A stretch of DNA of 63,804 nt, filler included, from Octopus bimaculoides (GCF_001194135.2; 7 parts of 6 records of this genome joined end to end with filler, not necessarily neighbours in it); one strand, 5' to 3'. Numbered from the whole stretch's first letter, positions 2,753 to 11,321 are shown. Translations and numbers: made by a program. The notes: generated from the sequence alone by a model not told the origin.

Positions 2753-2813
2753 CGTCAGTTCCTGGACCCCAGGGGAAATTGTACAAAATCCTACCTCGTG
2801 TTGGTATTGGAAG
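2753..2813 (+). CDS. Myosin exon a (61 nt), SVPGPQGKLYKILPRVGIG(R)
   Basis: Acceptor tttctttactacAG, donor AAG|GTAAGA; ends in phase 2, matching exon b. Confidence 0.8.
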
Positions 2814-5800
2814 GTAAGAGTTTTGTGTGGATGCATGTGTGTGTGTGTGTGTGTTTGTTCACATTTTCACTTCTCTAAAACTCACAAGCTACAAATGGTA
2901 TTGTCATTTCTCTCATCAACAACTTGTCTGCTGGCTTTAAACCTTCAAATATGTCTGAAATAAGAGACACCTAACTTGAGAAACAAGCAAGAGTTAATGA
3001 CTGGAAGGGCACTGGACTGTAAAACACTACTTTAACAATATATTTCTCTAACCCATGCTACCATGGAAAAGTGGACATAAATGACAAAGCTTTGATTAAT
3101 CCAAAGCCATGATAGAAAGTGCTGGAGAGTCGTATTGAATCTGAAATCCCATGGTTGTAAAGTAAACTTTTTAACCATCCAGCCATGCTTGCAGTAAAAT
3201 AATGAGGGAAATTCCCTGTGAGAGATCCAGGACCCTTGTGAGTGTTCAGGAAGTAGAGATTTAGCTCTTTGTCTGTTCAAGTCAATGATAAGTAATGGCC
3301 CTTTAAAGGTTCTTTGGCTCTAAGAGAAAGAGTAAAGAAACTCTTTGGTCATAAATGACCATGGAATTGTATCTAGAAAGTTCCCCTCCAAGGCACAAGT
3401 CCAGGCAAGGTTGTTTATGGAGGACCAGCAGTCGTCCATGCATACCAGCCTCCTCTCTCCACACTACTGATCTTATCCAAGGCAAAGGGGCTGATACAGC
3501 TTGGCACCAGTGATGTTGCAACTCATTTCTATGGCTGAGTGAACTGGAGCAACATAAAATAAAGTATCTTGCTCAAGAACAAAACACAGACCCCAGTCCA
3601 GGAATCGAACTCACTCCCTCATGGTCGTGAACCCGATGCTCTAGCCACTGAGCCATGCAGGAAACATTTACATTTACCATTTTGGAGGAAATATTGATTT
3701 CAAATTTTGGCACAAAGCCTGTAATTTCAGGGGAAGGAGCTAGTCAATTACACTGACCCCCAGTACTCAACTGGTACTTATTTTATTGATCCTGAAAGGA
3801 TGAAAGGCAAAGTCTATCTCAGCAGAATTTGAACTCAGAGCATGAAGACAGATGAAATGCCACCAAGCATATTATCTATCATGCTAACAATTCTGCCAGC
3901 TTCCCACCTTATTTCAGAGGAAATATTAAACTCTGTATTGCAAACTAACTGACCACTCAGCAATGTTACAATGCACTCTGTTTGCAGTTGTGTATTTTTC
4001 CTCTTTATTTGTCATACTTGCCTCTAGAAGAGTTTGTAGGTGGTGAATTCGTAGAATGTTTAGGACAGGAGATTAAACACCTTACGACTTATGTGTTGTG
4101 GTTATGAGTGTCCAGGAAGTGGCTTATGACTTATGTGTTGTGGTTCAAATTCTGCTATGGTCAACTTTGCCCTTCATTGTTTTTTTATTTTTTTATTTTT
4201 ATGGGTTGTGGTCTTTTATAATAAATTACAAGTTCAGGATTGTAAATTAGTAGAACTTTTAGACTGTTACATGGTAAGTCTTGTGTTATAATATCTGGTT
4301 CTGTGAAATCTAAGCTAAAAAATTCCACTTTTAGACTGCCATTAAACTGAAAGAACCATTTCCAAGTAGTTAAAGAAAACCAAACTATCAAATTTAAAAG
4401 TGCTTACATTTTTGGTGGGGACAATCAAAATGCAAAGGTCACAAGAAGGTCAATAGAGATGATGATGATGGTGGCAGCAGTGATGGTTGTTCTGGTGGTA
4501 GTGATGGTGGGGTTGACAGTGATGATGGTGTTGGTGGCAGTGGTGTTAGCTGTGGCGATGATAAAGTCAAAGAGTAGCTGCATAAGCCAAAGACAAAACA
4601 AGAGCTTGGTGATTTGTGAACTGGTAACAGGATACATCTAATTATTTAACTTCTTCAAAACTAATCTGCTCAAGGTTTCTGCTTATGTGAGACAAACTTC
4701 CTGCTTTAAAGTGATGAGAAATTAAAATTTTCCCTCAAAATTACACGTTAATTTGTTCAAAACATCAACTCAGTAGTCATTTTACTAAATTCTTCATTAT
4801 TTTCAAAATACATTGAATTAACTCTTTAACATTTAAACCAGCCATATCCAGCCCAAATTATTCTGCATGTTTTATGTTCAAACTGGCCAGATATGACCTC
4901 TCCTATCTATCCTTTAATGTCATTCTAAAAATAGCAATCACATCGTCATCATCATTTAACGTCCATTTCTTCCATGCTGGTATGGGTTGGACAGTTTGAC
5001 TGAGGTCTGGAGAGCCAGCAACTGCAATAGACTCCAACCACTCCGAGAGTGTAGTGGGTGCTTTTTACGTGCCACCGGCACAGGGGCCAGTCAGGCAGGC
5101 CTGATATCAATCAAGTTCTGATAGTGTGTTTTATGTACCATCGGCATGGGAGCCAGTCAGTGGGTACTGGCATCGGCCACATTTGGATGGTGCTTTTTAC
5201 GTGCCACCAGCATAGGAGGAGCTAATCAGGAGGTACTACCATTGGCCACGTTCAGATGGTGTTTTTTATGTTCCGCTAACAGAGGAGCCTATCAGGCAGA
5301 CCTAGCATCAACCACATTCAGGTGGTGCTTTTTACGTGCTACCGCCACGGGAGCCAATCAGAGGGCACTGGCCACAGCTACGGTATTGGTTTTACTTGAC
5401 TCAACAGGTCTTCTCAAGCATATCATATCGCCCAATGCATCAGGGGTACTCTTAAGTGAGCCAGATCTCACTTTTGTTTTGAATTGATCATGCATTATCT
5501 TGCAGTGATGAGATTTTGAGGAGATAACTGTTAATTTCTAGAATGATATTGTAGGGTTGATATAAGAGTTCACATTTGGCCAGTTTCAACATGAAACAGG
5601 TAGAAAATTTAGGCCGGTTTAGATCCTAAAACATGAAGTGTTGTTTCATTCTTCTATTACAGGTTGTCCAGGCACACAAACACGTTAGCAGAAGATTTTT
5701 GTTTGAAACTCGATGAAATCATCAAGAAAGTCTCTATCACCAAACCCCATTTTATTTATTGCCTAAAGGTAAGTAGATAGCAAGCAATCTATACTCATTG

Positions 5801-9908: not shown

Positions 9909-11321
9909 GCCTGTAAAAGCACCCACCGCACTTTGTAAAGTCCTTGGGGTTAGAAAGGGCATCCAGTCATAGAAAGCATGCCAAATCAGACTGGAGTCTG
10001 GTGCAGCACCCTAGCTTGCCAGCTCTGGTTAAACCATCCAACTCATGCCAGCATGGACAACAGATGTTAAATGATGATAGATATATTTATAGTATCATCA
10101 TCATTTAATACCCACTTTTCCATGCTTGCATGGATCAGATAGAATTTGTTGAGTCAGATTTTCTAATGCTGGATGCCCTTCCTGTCACCAACTCTCGCCT
10201 GTTTCCAAGCAAGGTAATATTGCTCCATGGACAGACTTGTTTTCACAGAAAATTGGAAATGAAAAACACTGATTGCATTACACTCATTTACAACCATCAC
10301 ATGACATCAAGATAAGAACATACACGTATACACACACAGAGAAACATGAATACACATATACATGTATTCATGCACCACATATATGTGTATGTATATTAAA
10401 AAAAGTGGGGTGGGGGAGGAGAATTAAGTAGATCAAGAATAAGGAAAGGAAATTTTTTGGTGTGGGCATTTTGGTATGAAATGATGCTAAAATCCCTGTT
10501 AACGACAAACGAACCTGGCAGTAAGTCTACTTGCCAACATTGTCACAAACATATGCATGTATTTAGTTTTCACACATAGTATACATGCATACACATACAC
10601 AAATGCAGGCACATATACACATATAGATATATATCCACACATACACATTCTTATACAAGCTTATACACATACACACATGCATGCATGCATACATACATAT
10701 ATGTCTATATGTATAAACACTTATACATACATATACACACACACACATATCCAAGGGTATAAACGTGAACTTATAATCTGGATTGAGTAACTGCAGATTT
10801 CTCAATAGTTCAGTGTGGGTATTCCCTTTTTCACTGATCTTCAACTTTATGTTAACATCTGCCGGGCAGCTAATTTCCACAACTGTGCACATATATGTAT
10901 GTCTGCATGTTGGTGTGTTTATGTCTCCGAAACTTAGCAGTTTGGCAAACGAGAATGATAGCATAAGTACCAAGCTTTAAAAAAAAAAAAAGAAAACTAA
11001 GTATTGGGATCAACTCATTTAACTAAAATTCTTTAAGGCAGCACACCAGTAGTCCATGCTTTTAACCACTACACCATATGCCTGTGGGCAATTATGGAGT
11101 GAATTTTAGGGCTTATAAACCTAATATTTTCCTATCCTTCCTAATGAAGGCTGGAGGGTATATCAGCCAAGACGTTGTGTTAACAACAAACAAAATGAGG
11201 ACAAATATCTGTCTAATGTAAATAATGTACATAATTCCTCATCTCTTAAATATAGGACTGTATTGTTTTTCTACGTTTCAAATTACAGTGAACAAGTACG
11301 ACAAGAACTGGAAGCCTACAA
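2753..11321 (+). CDS. dachs: Partial multi-exon gene: unconventional myosin (Dachs-like), C-terminal motor domain, converter and start of neck; 6 exons, last cut by an N gap
   Basis: Six AG/GT-bounded exons with matching phases (1/2, 2/0, 0/1, 1/0, 0/2, 2/?) splice stop-free to SVPGPQGKLYKILPRVGIGRLSRHTNTLAEDFCLKLDEIIKKVSITKPHFIYCLKSNDSSSYLTFETEVIRRQLQSLQIVTTANIIKTTPIHRIKYSLFNNLYKLLLPKISTAAGQSQEELCKNILEHLKEISRNFSLETQTFDWMFRQHHLLFSEQVRQELEAY. Colinear with recalled Dachs motifs (TLTQDFHTRLD..RPHFVRCIRSN..VRQIRSLQVL..HRMRFKQFNARY..SEGIRQHLE). Myosin identity strong; Dachs orthology from memory only. Confidence 0.65.
3340..3660 (-). mobile_element. tRNA-derived SINE family F
   Basis: Minus strand: A-box TGGCTCAGTGG, B-box GAGTTCGATTCC, central CTTGAGCAAGATACTTT..CTCCAGTTCACTCAGC. 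Confidence 0.75.
4944..5470 (-). mobile_element. Family D repeat (RTE-type tail) with internal ~66-bp minisatellite
   Basis: (CAT)n tail at 4944; five units starting 5057, 5124, 5189, 5258, 5324; other copies at 9905-10080(+), 11888-12040(+), 19850-20100(+). Confidence 0.75.
5663..5768 (+). CDS. Myosin exon b (106 nt), LSRHTNTLAEDFCLKLDEIIKKVSITKPHFIYCLK
   Basis: Acceptor tttcattcttctattacAG, donor AAG|GTAAGT; PHFIYCLK corresponds to the myosin PHFVRCIK motif. Confidence 0.92.
5964..6920 (+). mobile_element. Cluster of about five family A SINEs, head-to-tail and nested
   Basis: Copies separated by (ATT)n tails; 6036-6251 flanked by 17-bp TSD ATTATGTTCTGAGTTCA (6019-6035, 6252-6268). Confidence 0.85.
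7314..7413 (+). CDS. Myosin exon c (100 nt), SNDSSSYLTFETEVIRRQLQSLQIVTTANIIKT
   Basis: Acceptor ctatttctAG, donor GTACGT; continues the K-(P/S)N..F(D/E)..V..QL motif in frame. Confidence 0.9.
7552..7801 (+). mobile_element. Full-length family A SINE with 16-bp TSD, inserted into a family E copy
   Basis: AGAATTCATTGTGGCA at 7536-7551 and 7802-7817; A-rich tail. Confidence 0.9.
8100..8385 (+). pseudogene. CR1/L2-type LINE RT remnant, internally deleted
   Basis: KVDYGMICHKL..ITGK..(W)LHDFL joined to ETMLVLWRT...LDYCSQLWSP and YWERLK, with frameshifts. Confidence 0.75.
9098..9201 (+). CDS. Myosin exon d (104 nt), (T)PIHRIKYSLFNNLYKLLLPKISTAAGQSQEELCK
   Basis: Acceptor atattcacAG, donor AAG|GTGACC; converter-entry motif HR..Y..FN..Y. 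Confidence 0.88.
9631..9725 (+). CDS. Myosin exon e (95 nt), NILEHLKEISRNFSLETQTFDWMFRQHHLLF(S)
   Basis: Acceptor ggttgcAG, donor CAG|GTAGTG; phase 0 to 2; converter IL...W.....(I/L)F pattern. Confidence 0.82.
10749..10889 (-). pseudogene. Restriction-like endonuclease (RLE) fragment of a non-LTR retrotransposon
   Basis: CTVVEISCPADVNIKLKISEKGNTHTELLRNLQLLNPDYKFTFIPL resembles the RLE (D/E)(V/I)xxP.D.N....EK...Y..L pattern. Confidence 0.6.
11135..11262 (+). mobile_element. Penelope-like terminal repeat fragment with mutated hammerhead core
   Basis: Same family as 38620-38830; core reads CTAATGA..CAGCCAAGAC instead of CTGATGA..CAGCCGAAAC. Confidence 0.65.
11289..11321 (+). CDS. Myosin exon f, 5' part only, (S)EQVRQELEAY
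   Basis: Acceptor tttcaaattacAG, phase 2; matches the end-of-converter SE..RQ.LE motif; runs into N gap at 11322. Confidence 0.82.

What the first reader, a model, noticed from the sequence alone, without database searches (positions are those of the whole stretch)
2753..11321. Hidden six-exon Dachs-like myosin missed by the ORF track
All exons are 61-106 nt, yet splice phases chain perfectly into a stop-free myosin motor/converter segment. Dachs is a Fat-Hippo pathway myosin best known from insects, so a cephalopod copy is of evolutionary interest.
Basis: partly seen in the sequence, partly recalled or inferred. Interest (0 to 1): 0.7.

Follow-up and report, generated by a model that had tools for sequence, protein, structure and literature searches.

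The report
Octopus Dachs myosin exons, already annotated
The six short exons are real and encode the rear part of the motor of the Octopus bimaculoides counterpart of the fly myosin Dachs, but the gene is already in public databases under misleading names, so this is a correct and ordinary gene call.

Summary
Observation confirmed. Six + strand exons (2753-2813, 5663-5768, 7314-7413, 9098-9201, 9631-9725, 11289-11321; the last is cut by an assembly gap) have AG/GT borders. They splice into a stop-free 165-aa peptide that matches Pfam Myosin_head (E 1.8e-13).

The window is 100% identical to O. bimaculoides chromosome CM046624.1. The gene is already deposited as XP_014787716.1 ("unconventional myosin-XVI") and A0A0L8FR04. 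Full-length orthologues from O. sinensis and other cephalopods confirm all six exons.

The Dachs call is supported:
- The peptide and the full-length orthologues match D. melanogaster Dachs-PA far better than ten other fly myosins.
- They form a 99/100 neighbour-joining clade with Dachs.
- They share Dachs-type motifs, a single IQ motif and the Dachs tail with its Dlish-binding proline motif.
- They carry no ankyrin, RhoGAP, kinase, MyTH4-FERM or chitin-synthase domains.

Novelty is low. Dachs homologues are published from Placozoa to Cephalochordata, including a limpet, and a cuttlefish protein is already named DACHS.

One modest extra: the cephalopod lineage evolves about twice as fast as other members of the family.

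The parts
2753..2813 (+). Exon (61 nt; starts with 2 nt of a split codon and ends with 2 nt of the next). Encodes (A)SVPGPQGKLYKILPRVGIG(R), the end of actin-binding loop 2, with the family motif G-x-x-x-[RK]-I-[SL]-P.
   Evidence: The acceptor is ctttactacag and the donor gtaagag. It is 100% identical to P0001 and P0003 and 95% to O. sinensis P0015.
5663..5768 (+). Exon (106 nt). Encodes (R)LSRHTNTLAEDFCLKLDEIIKKVSITKPHFIYCLK, a helix followed by the core beta-strand that carries the PHF[VI]xC motif.
   Evidence: The acceptor is ttctattacag and the donor gtaagt. An exhaustive phmmer search with this exon alone found P0001 (E 1.2e-14) and P0002 (E 2e-8) among 1.84 billion proteins. The AF2 model of the orthologue has a helix at 624-640 and a strand at 643-651 with pLDDT 83-93.
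7314..7413 (+). Exon (100 nt). Encodes SNDSSSYLTFETEVIRRQLQSLQIVTTANIIKT, the SH2 and SH1 helices, with the Dachs-type 'R-Q-[IL]-x-[SA]-L-Q-[VI]' motif in place of the canonical QLRCNGVLE.
   Evidence: The acceptor is ctatttctag and the donor gtacgt. It is identical in P0001, P0003 and P0015. AF2 places helices at 663-672 and 675-684.
9098..9201 (+). Exon (104 nt). Encodes (T)PIHRIKYSLFNNLYKLLLPKISTAAGQSQEELCK, the first half of the converter. The canonical G-F/Y-P is replaced by T-P-I in octopus, cuttlefish and the other decapodiform transcript (Argonauta differs again).
   Evidence: The acceptor is gatattcacag and the donor gtgacc. It is 100% identical in P0001 and P0003. RefSeq XP_014787716.1 fails to splice here and reads on into the intron (…EELCKVTVPFLILIGCH*).
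9631..9725 (+). Exon (95 nt). Encodes NILEHLKEISRNFSLETQTFDWMFRQHHLLF(S), the second half of the converter, with the Dachs-type 'W…H-[ILV]-F-[LF]-S-E' ending in place of the canonical G-x-T-K-[IV]-F-F-R.
   Evidence: The acceptor is ttggttgcag and the donor gtagtg. It is present in UniProt A0A0L8FR04 (P0003) and 88% identical in P0015.
11289..11321 (+). Start of the next exon (33 nt visible, cut by the assembly gap 11322-11887). Encodes (S)EQVRQELEAY, the start of the lever-arm helix that leads into the IQ motif.
   Evidence: The acceptor is caaattacag. It is absent from both O. bimaculoides public models. It matches O. sinensis FSEQVRQELEAY, Argonauta SEQVRQELESY and the Sepia-like transcript SELVRQELEAY, each followed by KLH…IQ. 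AF2 models one long helix at 752-802.
11322..11887 (.). Assembly gap (566 N) that hides the rest of exon 6. Together with the gap just beyond the window, it probably also hides the IQ/neck exon(s).
   Evidence: Residues 762-836 of the O. sinensis orthologue find no match in the sequenced parts of the 60-kb locus L001, while the tail exons reappear downstream at L001 57023-57121 and 58949-59083.

Best explanation
The six exons belong to the apparently single-copy Octopus bimaculoides orthologue of Drosophila Dachs (myosin class XX in the Odronitz-Kollmar scheme; Sebe-Pedros et al. fold it into their 'XVI'). The gene spans more than 55 kb, with at least 12 coding exons upstream of the window and at least 2 tail exons downstream.

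The window encodes the last ~165 residues of the motor: the end of loop 2, the helix and core strand carrying PHF[IV]xC, the SH2/SH1 helices, the converter, and the first turns of the lever helix that continues into one IQ motif.

Shown here: the exon structure, the orthology, the myosin fold of the orthologue, and conservation of the Dachs-type nucleotide-pocket substitutions and of the C-terminal tail with its PPVPPxRxY motif.

Inferred by homology with fly Dachs: the protein acts mainly as an actin-bound cortical scaffold rather than a fast ATP-driven motor. Fly Dachs showed no ATP binding or ATPase activity in vitro but binds F-actin. The head would anchor the protein to cortical actin, the neck would bind calmodulin, and the tail would bind a Dlish-type SH3 adaptor downstream of Fat/Dachsous to restrain Warts. 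The segment in the window would be the relay between the actin- and nucleotide-binding parts of the head and the lever. In cephalopods it has diverged unusually fast.
For: - Exons and frame. Myosin_head E 1.8e-13.
- Identity with XP_014787716.1 and A0A0L8FR04 (O. bimaculoides). Window 100% identical to CM046624.1, with further exons on both sides.
- NP_788005 is Dachs-PA: 1232 aa, with G1048NGG, P1100RLS and K1105TTS exactly as numbered in PMC5047748.
- BLASTP of the window peptide: Dachs 81.6 bits (E 1e-21) against 51.2 for the next fly myosin. O. sinensis orthologue: Dachs 413 bits over residues 26-913 against 219 for the next. Tail alone: Dachs only, E 3e-10.
- NJ tree: Dachs, all family hits and the cephalopods form a clade at 99/100. 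The cephalopods sit with bivalves, a gastropod and an annelid.
- Shared signatures in the window segment and at the P-loop and switch I.
- Pfam finds only Myosin_head plus one IQ in full-length cephalopod proteins.
- Many RefSeq relatives in arthropods carry 'dachs' in their names, and a Sepia pharaonis member is named DACHS.
- No second, slow-evolving cephalopod paralogue appears when a mussel Dachs is the query.
- The AF2 model of the orthologue has pTM 0.73, and the window segment is mostly at pLDDT 80-94 with the expected helices and strands. Foldseek best matches are myosin motors, TM about 0.8 normalised to the target.
- Transcript-length Logan contigs (3.1-3.6 kb) encode intact 939-953-aa proteins in decapodiform cephalopods.
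- Function of fly Dachs: PMC12828244 (citing Cao et al. 2014) and PMC5047748.
Against: - No RNA evidence from O. bimaculoides itself was available here. Both public models of this gene are truncated or wrong at the 3' end, and the IQ/neck exons are not in the assembled sequence.
- The cephalopod branch is about twice as long as any other in the family. Fourteen of 109 columns invariant in 17 other members are changed in all four cephalopods compared. Function may therefore have shifted.
- Vertebrate MYO16, MYO9, MYO3 and MYO19 and mollusc myosin-chitin synthases were not in my tree, because no sequences were on hand. The tree is NJ, not ML.
- The mechanism is transferred from Drosophila. Nothing is known about Dachs function in any mollusc.
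Confidence: 0.92

Rival explanations
1. It is a class XVI myosin (MYO16-type), as the RefSeq product name 'unconventional myosin-XVI' says.
For: RefSeq names XP_014787716.1 this way. Sebe-Pedros et al. [quoted passage not shown]
Against: Full-length cephalopod orthologues have no ankyrin repeats or any Pfam domain other than Myosin_head and IQ. They also carry the Dachs-specific tail. Automatic names for the same orthologous family are inconsistent (VIIa, IXb, Vb, I, IIIb, X, XV, XIX), so the names carry little information.
Confidence: 0.03
2. It is the N-terminal myosin motor domain of a lophotrochozoan myosin-chitin synthase (the kind used in mollusc shell and radula formation).
For: Molluscs and annelids have chitin synthases fused to a divergent myosin head, which Sebe-Pedros et al. 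place in their class XVI (PMC3942024 listed). The window peptide is a divergent myosin head whose downstream part is hidden by a gap.
Against: The O. sinensis, O. vulgaris, Argonauta and decapodiform orthologues end about 150 residues after the IQ motif, with no transmembrane or chitin-synthase part. The O. bimaculoides locus has the Dachs-type tail exons 5-7 kb downstream. The tree and BLAST results both point to Dachs.
Confidence: 0.01
3. It is a decaying or non-functional copy (pseudogene, or a gene released from constraint) that merely still looks spliced.
For: Cephalopods show a two-fold rate acceleration and have lost residues that are invariant elsewhere, for example G-F-P to T-P-I and R to Y/H in PHFVRC. 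Both public O. bimaculoides models are truncated. No octopus transcript contig was seen in the collection.
Against: There are no stops or frameshifts in any of the 20 exons located in the locus, and all splice sites in the window are canonical. O. bimaculoides and O. sinensis are 95.9% identical over 708 aligned residues. Intact full-length proteins exist in octopods and decapodiforms, which are separate orders, and decapodiforms have full-length transcripts. The truncations coincide with assembly gaps and a missed donor, not with lesions in the gene. The AF2 model is confident.
Confidence: 0.04

Closest known systems
Drosophila melanogaster Dachs (Dachs-PA, NP_788005; myosin class XX)
   Same: It is the best match among 11 fly myosins, for the window peptide and for the full-length orthologue. 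The alignment runs from the start of the motor to the last residues of the tail. Shared motifs include G..RI[SL]P in loop 2, PHF[VI]xC[IL][RK][SA]N, RQ[IL]x[SA]LQ[VI], PHR[MI][RK][FY], and H[IV]F[LF]SE at the end of the converter. Also shared are an aromatic, His or Ala residue in place of Glu after the P-loop GK[TS], SSR[IVM]G in switch I, one IQ motif, and the tail motif PPVPPxRxY followed by a conserved ~70-residue domain.
   Different: The cephalopod proteins lack the long Gln/Gly/Ser-rich N-terminal extension of fly Dachs; PMC3620549 reports the same for the Lottia, amphioxus and Nematostella homologues. Identity is only about 31-33%. In cephalopods R of PHFVRC is Y or H and GK[KR]H is RQ[HKN]H; in all but Argonauta the converter G-[FY]-P is T-P-I; in octopods L-E-T of the SH1 region is V-T-T or A-P-A. 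The gene has more than 20 exons against 7 in the fly (PMC3620549).
Dachs-family myosins of other molluscs (e.g. Mytilus californianus P0021, Ostrea edulis P0026, Gigantopelta aegis P0018) and the published Lottia gigantea dachs
   Same: The architecture and motifs are the same. The cephalopod clade falls next to them and Capitella in the tree.
   Different: Bivalve and gastropod proteins are 45-49% identical to arthropod and amphioxus Dachs. The O. sinensis protein is only 31-34% identical to any non-cephalopod member compared. Relative-rate tests give 2-4 times more lineage-specific changes in cephalopods (chi-square 21-79 against bivalves and the gastropod).
Deposited cephalopod entries: XP_014787716.1 and A0A0L8FR04 (O. 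bimaculoides), XP_029650710.2 (O. sinensis), CAI9740215.1 (O. vulgaris), GAB1610967.1 (Argonauta hians), CAE1309011.1 'DACHS' (Sepia/Acanthosepion pharaonis)
   Same: The O. bimaculoides entries are the same gene and the others are its orthologues.
   Different: XP_014787716.1 stops after reading into intron 4. A0A0L8FR04 skips exon 6 and ends in a false exon at window 12036-12566. The Sepia entry carries an N-terminal Get2-like region that the transcript-derived proteins lack, which is probably a fused model. Product names range over XVI, VIIa and DACHS.

Membership tests
Myosin superfamily (Pfam PF00063 Myosin_head) | Significant match to the motor-domain profile at the right positions | tested here: met
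   The spliced window peptide scores E 1.8e-13, 50.1 bits against a cut-off of 33.3, over profile positions 553-669/679. The deposited protein containing it scores E 4e-56.
Myosin superfamily (Pfam PF00063 Myosin_head) | Myosin motor fold | tested here: met
   The AF2 model of the O. sinensis orthologue has pTM 0.73. The Foldseek top hits are myosin X, II and I motors, with probability 1.00 and TM 0.78-0.81 normalised to the target. This was tested on the orthologue, not on the window fragment alone.
Dachs / class XX myosin | Closest to D. melanogaster Dachs among the fly's myosins | tested here: met
   Window peptide: 81.6 bits against 51.2 or less. P0015: 413 against 219 or less. P0002: 454 against 208 or less. 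The identity of NP_788005 as Dachs-PA was checked against the residue numbering in PMC5047748.
Dachs / class XX myosin | Monophyly with Dachs to the exclusion of other classes | tested here: met
   NJ tree on 720 columns with 100 bootstraps: the Dachs clade is supported at 99 and the cephalopods at 100. Limits: the outgroups are only fly classes I, II, III, V, VII, XV and XVIII, and the tree is NJ, not ML.
Dachs / class XX myosin | Class-specific sequence signatures inside the window segment | tested here: met
   G…[RK]I[SL]P, [SA]N after PHF..C[IL][RK], [SA]LQ[VI], and H[ILV]F[LF]SE are shared with all family members and absent from fly classes I, II, V, VII and XV.
Dachs / class XX myosin | Architecture: motor, one IQ motif, then a short tail with no known domain | tested here: met
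   Pfam finds only Myosin_head and one IQ in P0002, P0015 and P0016. In O. bimaculoides itself the IQ region lies in assembly gaps, so this was tested on orthologues.
Dachs / class XX myosin | Conserved C-terminal tail with the proline motif that binds the SH3 adaptor Dlish | tested here: met
   The tail of P0015 aligns only with Dachs (E 3e-10; PPVPPARHY against PPVPPSRSY). The same exon is present in the O. bimaculoides locus at L001 57023-57121. Actual binding to Dlish cannot be tested with these tools.
Dachs / class XX myosin | Acts downstream of Fat/Dachsous on Warts/Hippo and junctional tension | not testable with these tools
   This is known only from Drosophila genetics (PMC12828244, PMC5047748). 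No paper in the searched library treats Dachs in a cephalopod.
Myosin XVI (MYO16 type; the RefSeq name) | N-terminal ankyrin repeats before the motor | tested here: not met
   No Ank hits in P0002, P0015 or P0016.
Myosin XVI (MYO16 type; the RefSeq name) | Motor groups with vertebrate MYO16 | not tested
The D. melanogaster set used here (11 of the fly myosins in the Sebe-Pedros data file) has no entry that I could assign to class XVI.
Lophotrochozoan myosin-chitin synthase | Chitin synthase (GT2) domain and transmembrane helices after the motor | tested here: not met
   The orthologues end about 150 residues after the IQ motif with the Dachs tail, and Pfam finds no chitin-synthase domain.
Myosin IX / III / VII-X-XV (names given by annotation pipelines to relatives) | RhoGAP and C1 domains (IX); N-terminal kinase (III); MyTH4-FERM (VII, X, XV) | tested here: not met
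   None of these domains is found in the cephalopod, Mytilus or Rhodnius family members. BLAST scores to fly ninaC (III), ck/Myo28B1 (VII) and Myo10A (XV) are about half the score to Dachs or less.

The most novel reading that the evidence does not exclude
The coleoid cephalopod Dachs lineage went through a lineage-specific burst of change. That burst rewrote residues which are invariant from cnidarians to amphioxus, including positions in the SH1-helix/converter relay encoded in this window. This could mean that the mechanical coupling of the head, or its place in Fat-Dachsous-Hippo signalling, was remodelled in cephalopods, rather than simply reflecting a generally fast-evolving genome.
Probability: 0.25. 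Interest if true: 0.4.

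Novelty: already known. Interest (0 to 1): 0.15.

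Why it matters
The result has three small practical uses.
- It corrects the names and the 3' ends of two public O. bimaculoides gene models.
- It shows that assembly gaps, not biology, truncated those models.
- It records that cephalopods keep one Dachs gene with the Dlish-binding tail, so the Fat-Dachsous-Dachs module is probably present in these animals.

The faster evolution of the cephalopod copy is a lead for anyone studying Hippo or planar-polarity signalling in molluscs. It does not open a long-standing question.

Tried and rejected
- Word-indexed protein search with the 165-aa peptide gave no hit, although XP_014787716.1 contains 135 identical residues. This was a sensitivity failure of that index for a short query, not evidence of absence. 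The exhaustive search with exon 2 alone found the protein.
- The spliced peptide could not be submitted to the exhaustive search because it is not a contiguous window translation.
I replaced it with a list of stop-free segments and tblastn of orthologues. These found no further myosin exons in the window, either upstream of 2753 or downstream of 11888.
- Chitin-synthase and MYO16 readings were considered after reading Sebe-Pedros 2014 and rejected on architecture and phylogeny.
- dN/dS between octopus species could not be computed. The O. sinensis gene spans 123 kb and its DNA was not returned.
- A search for 'NP_788005' in the paper library found nothing. Its identity as Dachs-PA was established instead from the residue numbering in PMC5047748.
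- Rfam found nothing in the window.
- Pfam gave no significant family for the transposon-like ORF fragments or for the false 3' exon.
- No paper in the library discusses Dachs in cephalopods.

Full report
**1. What is in the sequence**

The piece (1-12834) is AT-rich eukaryotic DNA with microsatellites, dispersed repeats and two internal N gaps, 969-1593 and 11322-11887.
- 2753-2813 (61 nt)
- 5663-5768 (106 nt)
- 7314-7413 (100 nt)
- 9098-9201 (104 nt)
- 9631-9725 (95 nt)
- 11289-11321 (33 nt, running into the gap)

Each is preceded by a pyrimidine tract and AG. The first five are followed by GT. Joined, they give one open frame of 165 codons:

SVPGPQGKLYKILPRVGIGRLSRHTNTLAEDFCLKLDEIIKKVSITKPHFIYCLKSNDSSSYLTFETEVIRRQLQSLQIVTTANIIKTTPIHRIKYSLFNNLYKLLLPKISTAAGQSQEELCKNILEHLKEISRNFSLETQTFDWMFRQHHLLFSEQVRQELEAY

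The other two frames are full of stops. The peptide matches Pfam Myosin_head at E 1.8e-13, 50.1 bits, above the curated cut-off of 33.3, over profile positions 553-669 of 679. It aligns with the C-terminal quarter of solved myosin V, I, XV and II motors. The only correction is that the sixth exon is visible for just 33 nt because the assembly gap cuts it.

**2. Where it comes from and whether it was hidden**

A word-indexed protein search with the peptide found nothing. That was a false negative. An exhaustive phmmer search of 1.84 billion proteins with exon 2 alone returned two proteins.

The first, P0001, is RefSeq XP_014787716.1, "unconventional myosin-XVI [Octopus bimaculoides]". Its cluster mate P0003 is UniProt A0A0L8FR04. 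The second, P0002, is a transcript-derived 939-aa protein. Its cluster includes CAE1309011.1, "DACHS [Acanthosepion (Sepia) pharaonis]".

The genomic locus of P0001 (L001, from GCA_001194135.2, chromosome CM046624.1) contains the window at 100% identity, gaps included. So the organism is O. bimaculoides and the gene is already deposited. It was hidden only from a prokaryote-style ORF list.

Both public models are faulty in this stretch:
- XP_014787716.1 uses exons 1-4 and then misses the donor at 9201. It reads into the intron and ends …EELCKVTVPFLILIGCH*.
- A0A0L8FR04 uses exons 1-5, skips exon 6, and ends in a 178-aa low-complexity ORF at window 12036-12566. That ORF has no homology to any orthologue and no Pfam family.

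O. sinensis XP_029650710.2 (P0015, 920 aa) reads …QHHLLFSEQVRQELEAYKLH…, and Argonauta and two decapodiform transcripts agree.

tblastn of P0015 on L001 finds 12 further coding exons upstream of the window. It also finds two tail exons downstream, at L001 57023-57121 and 58949-59083. None carries a stop or a frameshift. Residues 762-836 of the orthologue (the IQ/neck) find no match in assembled sequence. They presumably lie in the gap after exon 6 or in the 1.1-kb gap just beyond the window. No other myosin exon lies in the window.

**3. Which myosin**

A search with the full-length cephalopod protein returns one coherent family of 750-1430-aa proteins. They are about 30-37% identical over roughly 75-99% of the query (96% for most). 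Members come from molluscs, an annelid, arthropods, echinoderms, hemichordates, amphioxus and cnidarians. Their automatic names are inconsistent (myosin VIIa, IXb, Vb, I, IIIb, X, XV, XIX). Many arthropod RefSeq entries are "unconventional myosin-IXb-like dachs".

To test the link to the founding member, I took D. melanogaster myosins from the data file of Sebe-Pedros et al. 2014. NP_788005 in that file is Dachs-PA. It is 1232 aa long and has GNGG at 1048, PRLS at 1100 and KTTS at 1105. These match the residue numbering given for Dachs-PA by Zhang et al. 2016.

BLASTP results against the fly set:

| Query | Dachs | Next best fly myosin |
|---|---|---|
| Window peptide | 81.6 bits (E 1e-21) | 51.2 bits (Myo10A, class XV; didum, class V) |
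| P0015 | 413 bits over residues 26-913 | 219 bits |
| P0002 | 454 bits | 208 bits |
| Tail of P0015 alone | E 3e-10 | no other fly myosin matched |

An NJ tree of 32 sequences on 720 columns puts Dachs, all sampled family members and the five cephalopod proteins in one clade at 99/100. The cephalopods (100/100) sit beside bivalves, a gastropod and Capitella.

Inside the window segment, the octopus peptide shares signatures found in every family member and in no other fly class:
- G…[RK]I[SL]P at the end of loop 2
- [SA]N instead of PN after PHF..C[IL][RK]
- RQ[IL]x[SA]LQ[VI] instead of QLRCxGVLE
- H[ILV]F[LF]SE instead of TK[IV]FFR at the end of the converter

At the nucleotide pocket, the cephalopods share the family's departures. 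An aromatic, His or Ala residue replaces Glu after GK[TS], and switch I reads SSR[IVM]G.

Pfam finds only Myosin_head and one IQ in full-length cephalopod proteins. There are no ankyrin repeats (class XVI), no RhoGAP/C1 (IX), no kinase (III), no MyTH4-FERM (VII/X/XV) and no chitin synthase. The chitin-synthase rival came from Sebe-Pedros et al., who place mollusc and annelid myosin-chitin synthases in their class XVI. [quoted passage not shown] In that scheme the RefSeq label and the Dachs label partly overlap.

A mussel Dachs used as query finds bivalves, gastropods, amphioxus, arthropods and hemichordates in its top 120 hits (856 bits or more) and no cephalopod. So there is no second, conservative cephalopod paralogue in this collection. 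The fast clade is the cephalopod orthologue.

**4. How it most likely works**

Structure was shown on the orthologue. An AlphaFold2 model of P0015, built with a 30-sequence family alignment, has mean pLDDT 77.6 and pTM 0.73. It superposes on solved myosin X, II and I motors at TM about 0.8 normalised to the target.

The window segment corresponds to P0015 residues 597-761. It is modelled as follows, mostly at pLDDT 80-94:
- a disordered loop-2 end (about 611-620, pLDDT 48)
- helix 624-640
- core strand 643-651 (PHFIYCLK)
- helices 663-672 and 675-684 (SH2/SH1)
- converter elements 688-750
- a long lever helix from 752 that contains the IQ motif

The element names rest on standard myosin structural knowledge and on the alignment with fly myosins.

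The tail (848-913) is modelled as a compact all-beta domain. It is preceded by the PPVPPARHY motif, which matches the Dlish-binding site of fly Dachs (PMC5047748).

Function is inferred. In Drosophila, Dachs did not bind ATP and showed no ATPase in vitro, but it binds F-actin and Warts. It needs its head for cortical localisation and its tail for binding Dlish. It promotes growth by restraining Warts downstream of Fat and Dachsous (PMC12828244, citing Cao et al. 2014; PMC5047748). The octopus protein keeps the same pocket substitutions and the same tail. The most likely reading is therefore the same kind of actin-anchored cortical scaffold. Whether it hydrolyses ATP, and whether it acts in Fat-Hippo signalling in a mollusc, is untested.

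**5. One thing that is not routine**

The cephalopod branch is long. Root-to-tip distances within the family are 0.93-1.13 for cephalopods against 0.39-0.69 for all others.

Tajima relative-rate tests against bivalves or the gastropod were run with amphioxus, centipede or coral as outgroup. They give 143-221 unique changes in cephalopods against 46-89 in the comparator (chi-square 21-79). The excess is smaller against Capitella (chi-square 6-30).

The mussel protein is 45-49% identical to fly, centipede and amphioxus Dachs. The O. sinensis protein is 31-34% identical to the same set of non-cephalopod members.

Fourteen of 109 columns that are invariant in 17 other members are changed in all four cephalopods compared. 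Several lie in the window:
- R to Y/H in PHFVRC
- G-[FY]-P to T-P-I at the start of the converter (octopus and decapodiforms; Argonauta differs)
- GK[KR]H to RQ[HKN]H

The gene is nevertheless intact in octopods and decapodiforms. It is 95.9% identical between O. bimaculoides and O. sinensis and is transcribed in decapodiforms. Decay is therefore unlikely. I could not tell a gene-specific burst from a general cephalopod rate effect.

**6. Comparison with what is known, and verdict**

Dachs and Dlish homologues are reported from Placozoa to Cephalochordata (PMC5047748). A dachs orthologue lacking the N-terminal extension is reported in the limpet Lottia (PMC3620549). A cuttlefish entry is already named DACHS. 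No paper in the searched library discusses Dachs in cephalopods.

The finding is a correct gene-fragment call and a correct class assignment for a gene already in public databases. It adds corrections to two gene models and a rate observation. Novelty: already known. Interest: low.

Noticed in passing
window 9202-9240 and 12036-12566: Both public O. bimaculoides models of this gene are wrong at the 3' end. XP_014787716.1 reads through the exon-4 donor into the intron and stops (VTVPFLILIGCH*). A0A0L8FR04 skips exon 6 and ends in a 178-aa Asn-rich ORF with no Pfam family and no counterpart in any orthologue.
   Followed up: yes
family-wide; in the window at 5663-5768, 7314-7413, 9098-9201 and 9631-9725: Cephalopod Dachs proteins evolve about twice as fast as all other family members (NJ branch lengths; Tajima tests with chi-square 21-79 against bivalves and the gastropod). 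They have replaced 14 of 109 otherwise invariant residues. No slow paralogue was found in cephalopods.
   Followed up: partly
window 6032-6163, 6396-6527, 6623-6754 and 7552-7683 (direct); 3760-3910 and 766-828 (inverted): A short dispersed repeat of about 130-200 nt has at least seven copies in both orientations in the introns. The shared core is TTCTGAGTTCAAATTCTGCCAAGGT…GCCTTTCATCC. It is SINE-like, with no Rfam or tRNA match.
   Followed up: partly
window 1594-1741 / 2134-2281: A 148-nt inverted repeat, 85% complementary, flanks about 390 nt that include (CA/TG)n and (ACAT)n microsatellites. It may be a foldback or MITE-like element. A related 80-nt arm lies at 10909-10988.
   Followed up: no
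window 5149-5361: A tandem repeat of a 66-nt unit, 3.2 copies at 71% match, lies inside intron 1. It produces a spurious 120-aa open frame (5125-5484).
   Followed up: no
window 3-356 (- strand), 8126-8412 (+), 12529-12831 (+): Open stretches resemble tails of retrotransposon (LINE-type) proteins, for example …FRYLGDQVSSGGGCAESVAARIRIAWAKFRELLPLL… and …KYKDLEIEITRMWNLKTETIPIIVGALG…. This resemblance is from memory. Pfam gave nothing significant.
   Followed up: partly
outside the window: L001 57023-57121 and 58949-59083; P0015 residues 848-913: The Dachs tail, which has no Pfam or SMART domain, is modelled by AlphaFold2 as a compact all-beta domain of eight or nine short strands at pLDDT about 86-89. 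It lies directly after the conserved PPVPPxRxY motif. I did not search for its fold separately.
   Followed up: no
P0004 (CAE1309011.1, Sepia pharaonis 'DACHS'): The 1230-aa cuttlefish model has an N-terminal Get2-like region (Pfam E 1.2e-7) that is absent from the 939-953-aa transcript-derived proteins of the same cluster. This is probably a fusion with an upstream gene in the annotation.
   Followed up: no
tool behaviour: The word-indexed protein search returned no hit for a 165-aa query of which 135 residues are identical to a protein in its own collection. A negative from that tool with a short query is not evidence of absence.
   Followed up: yes
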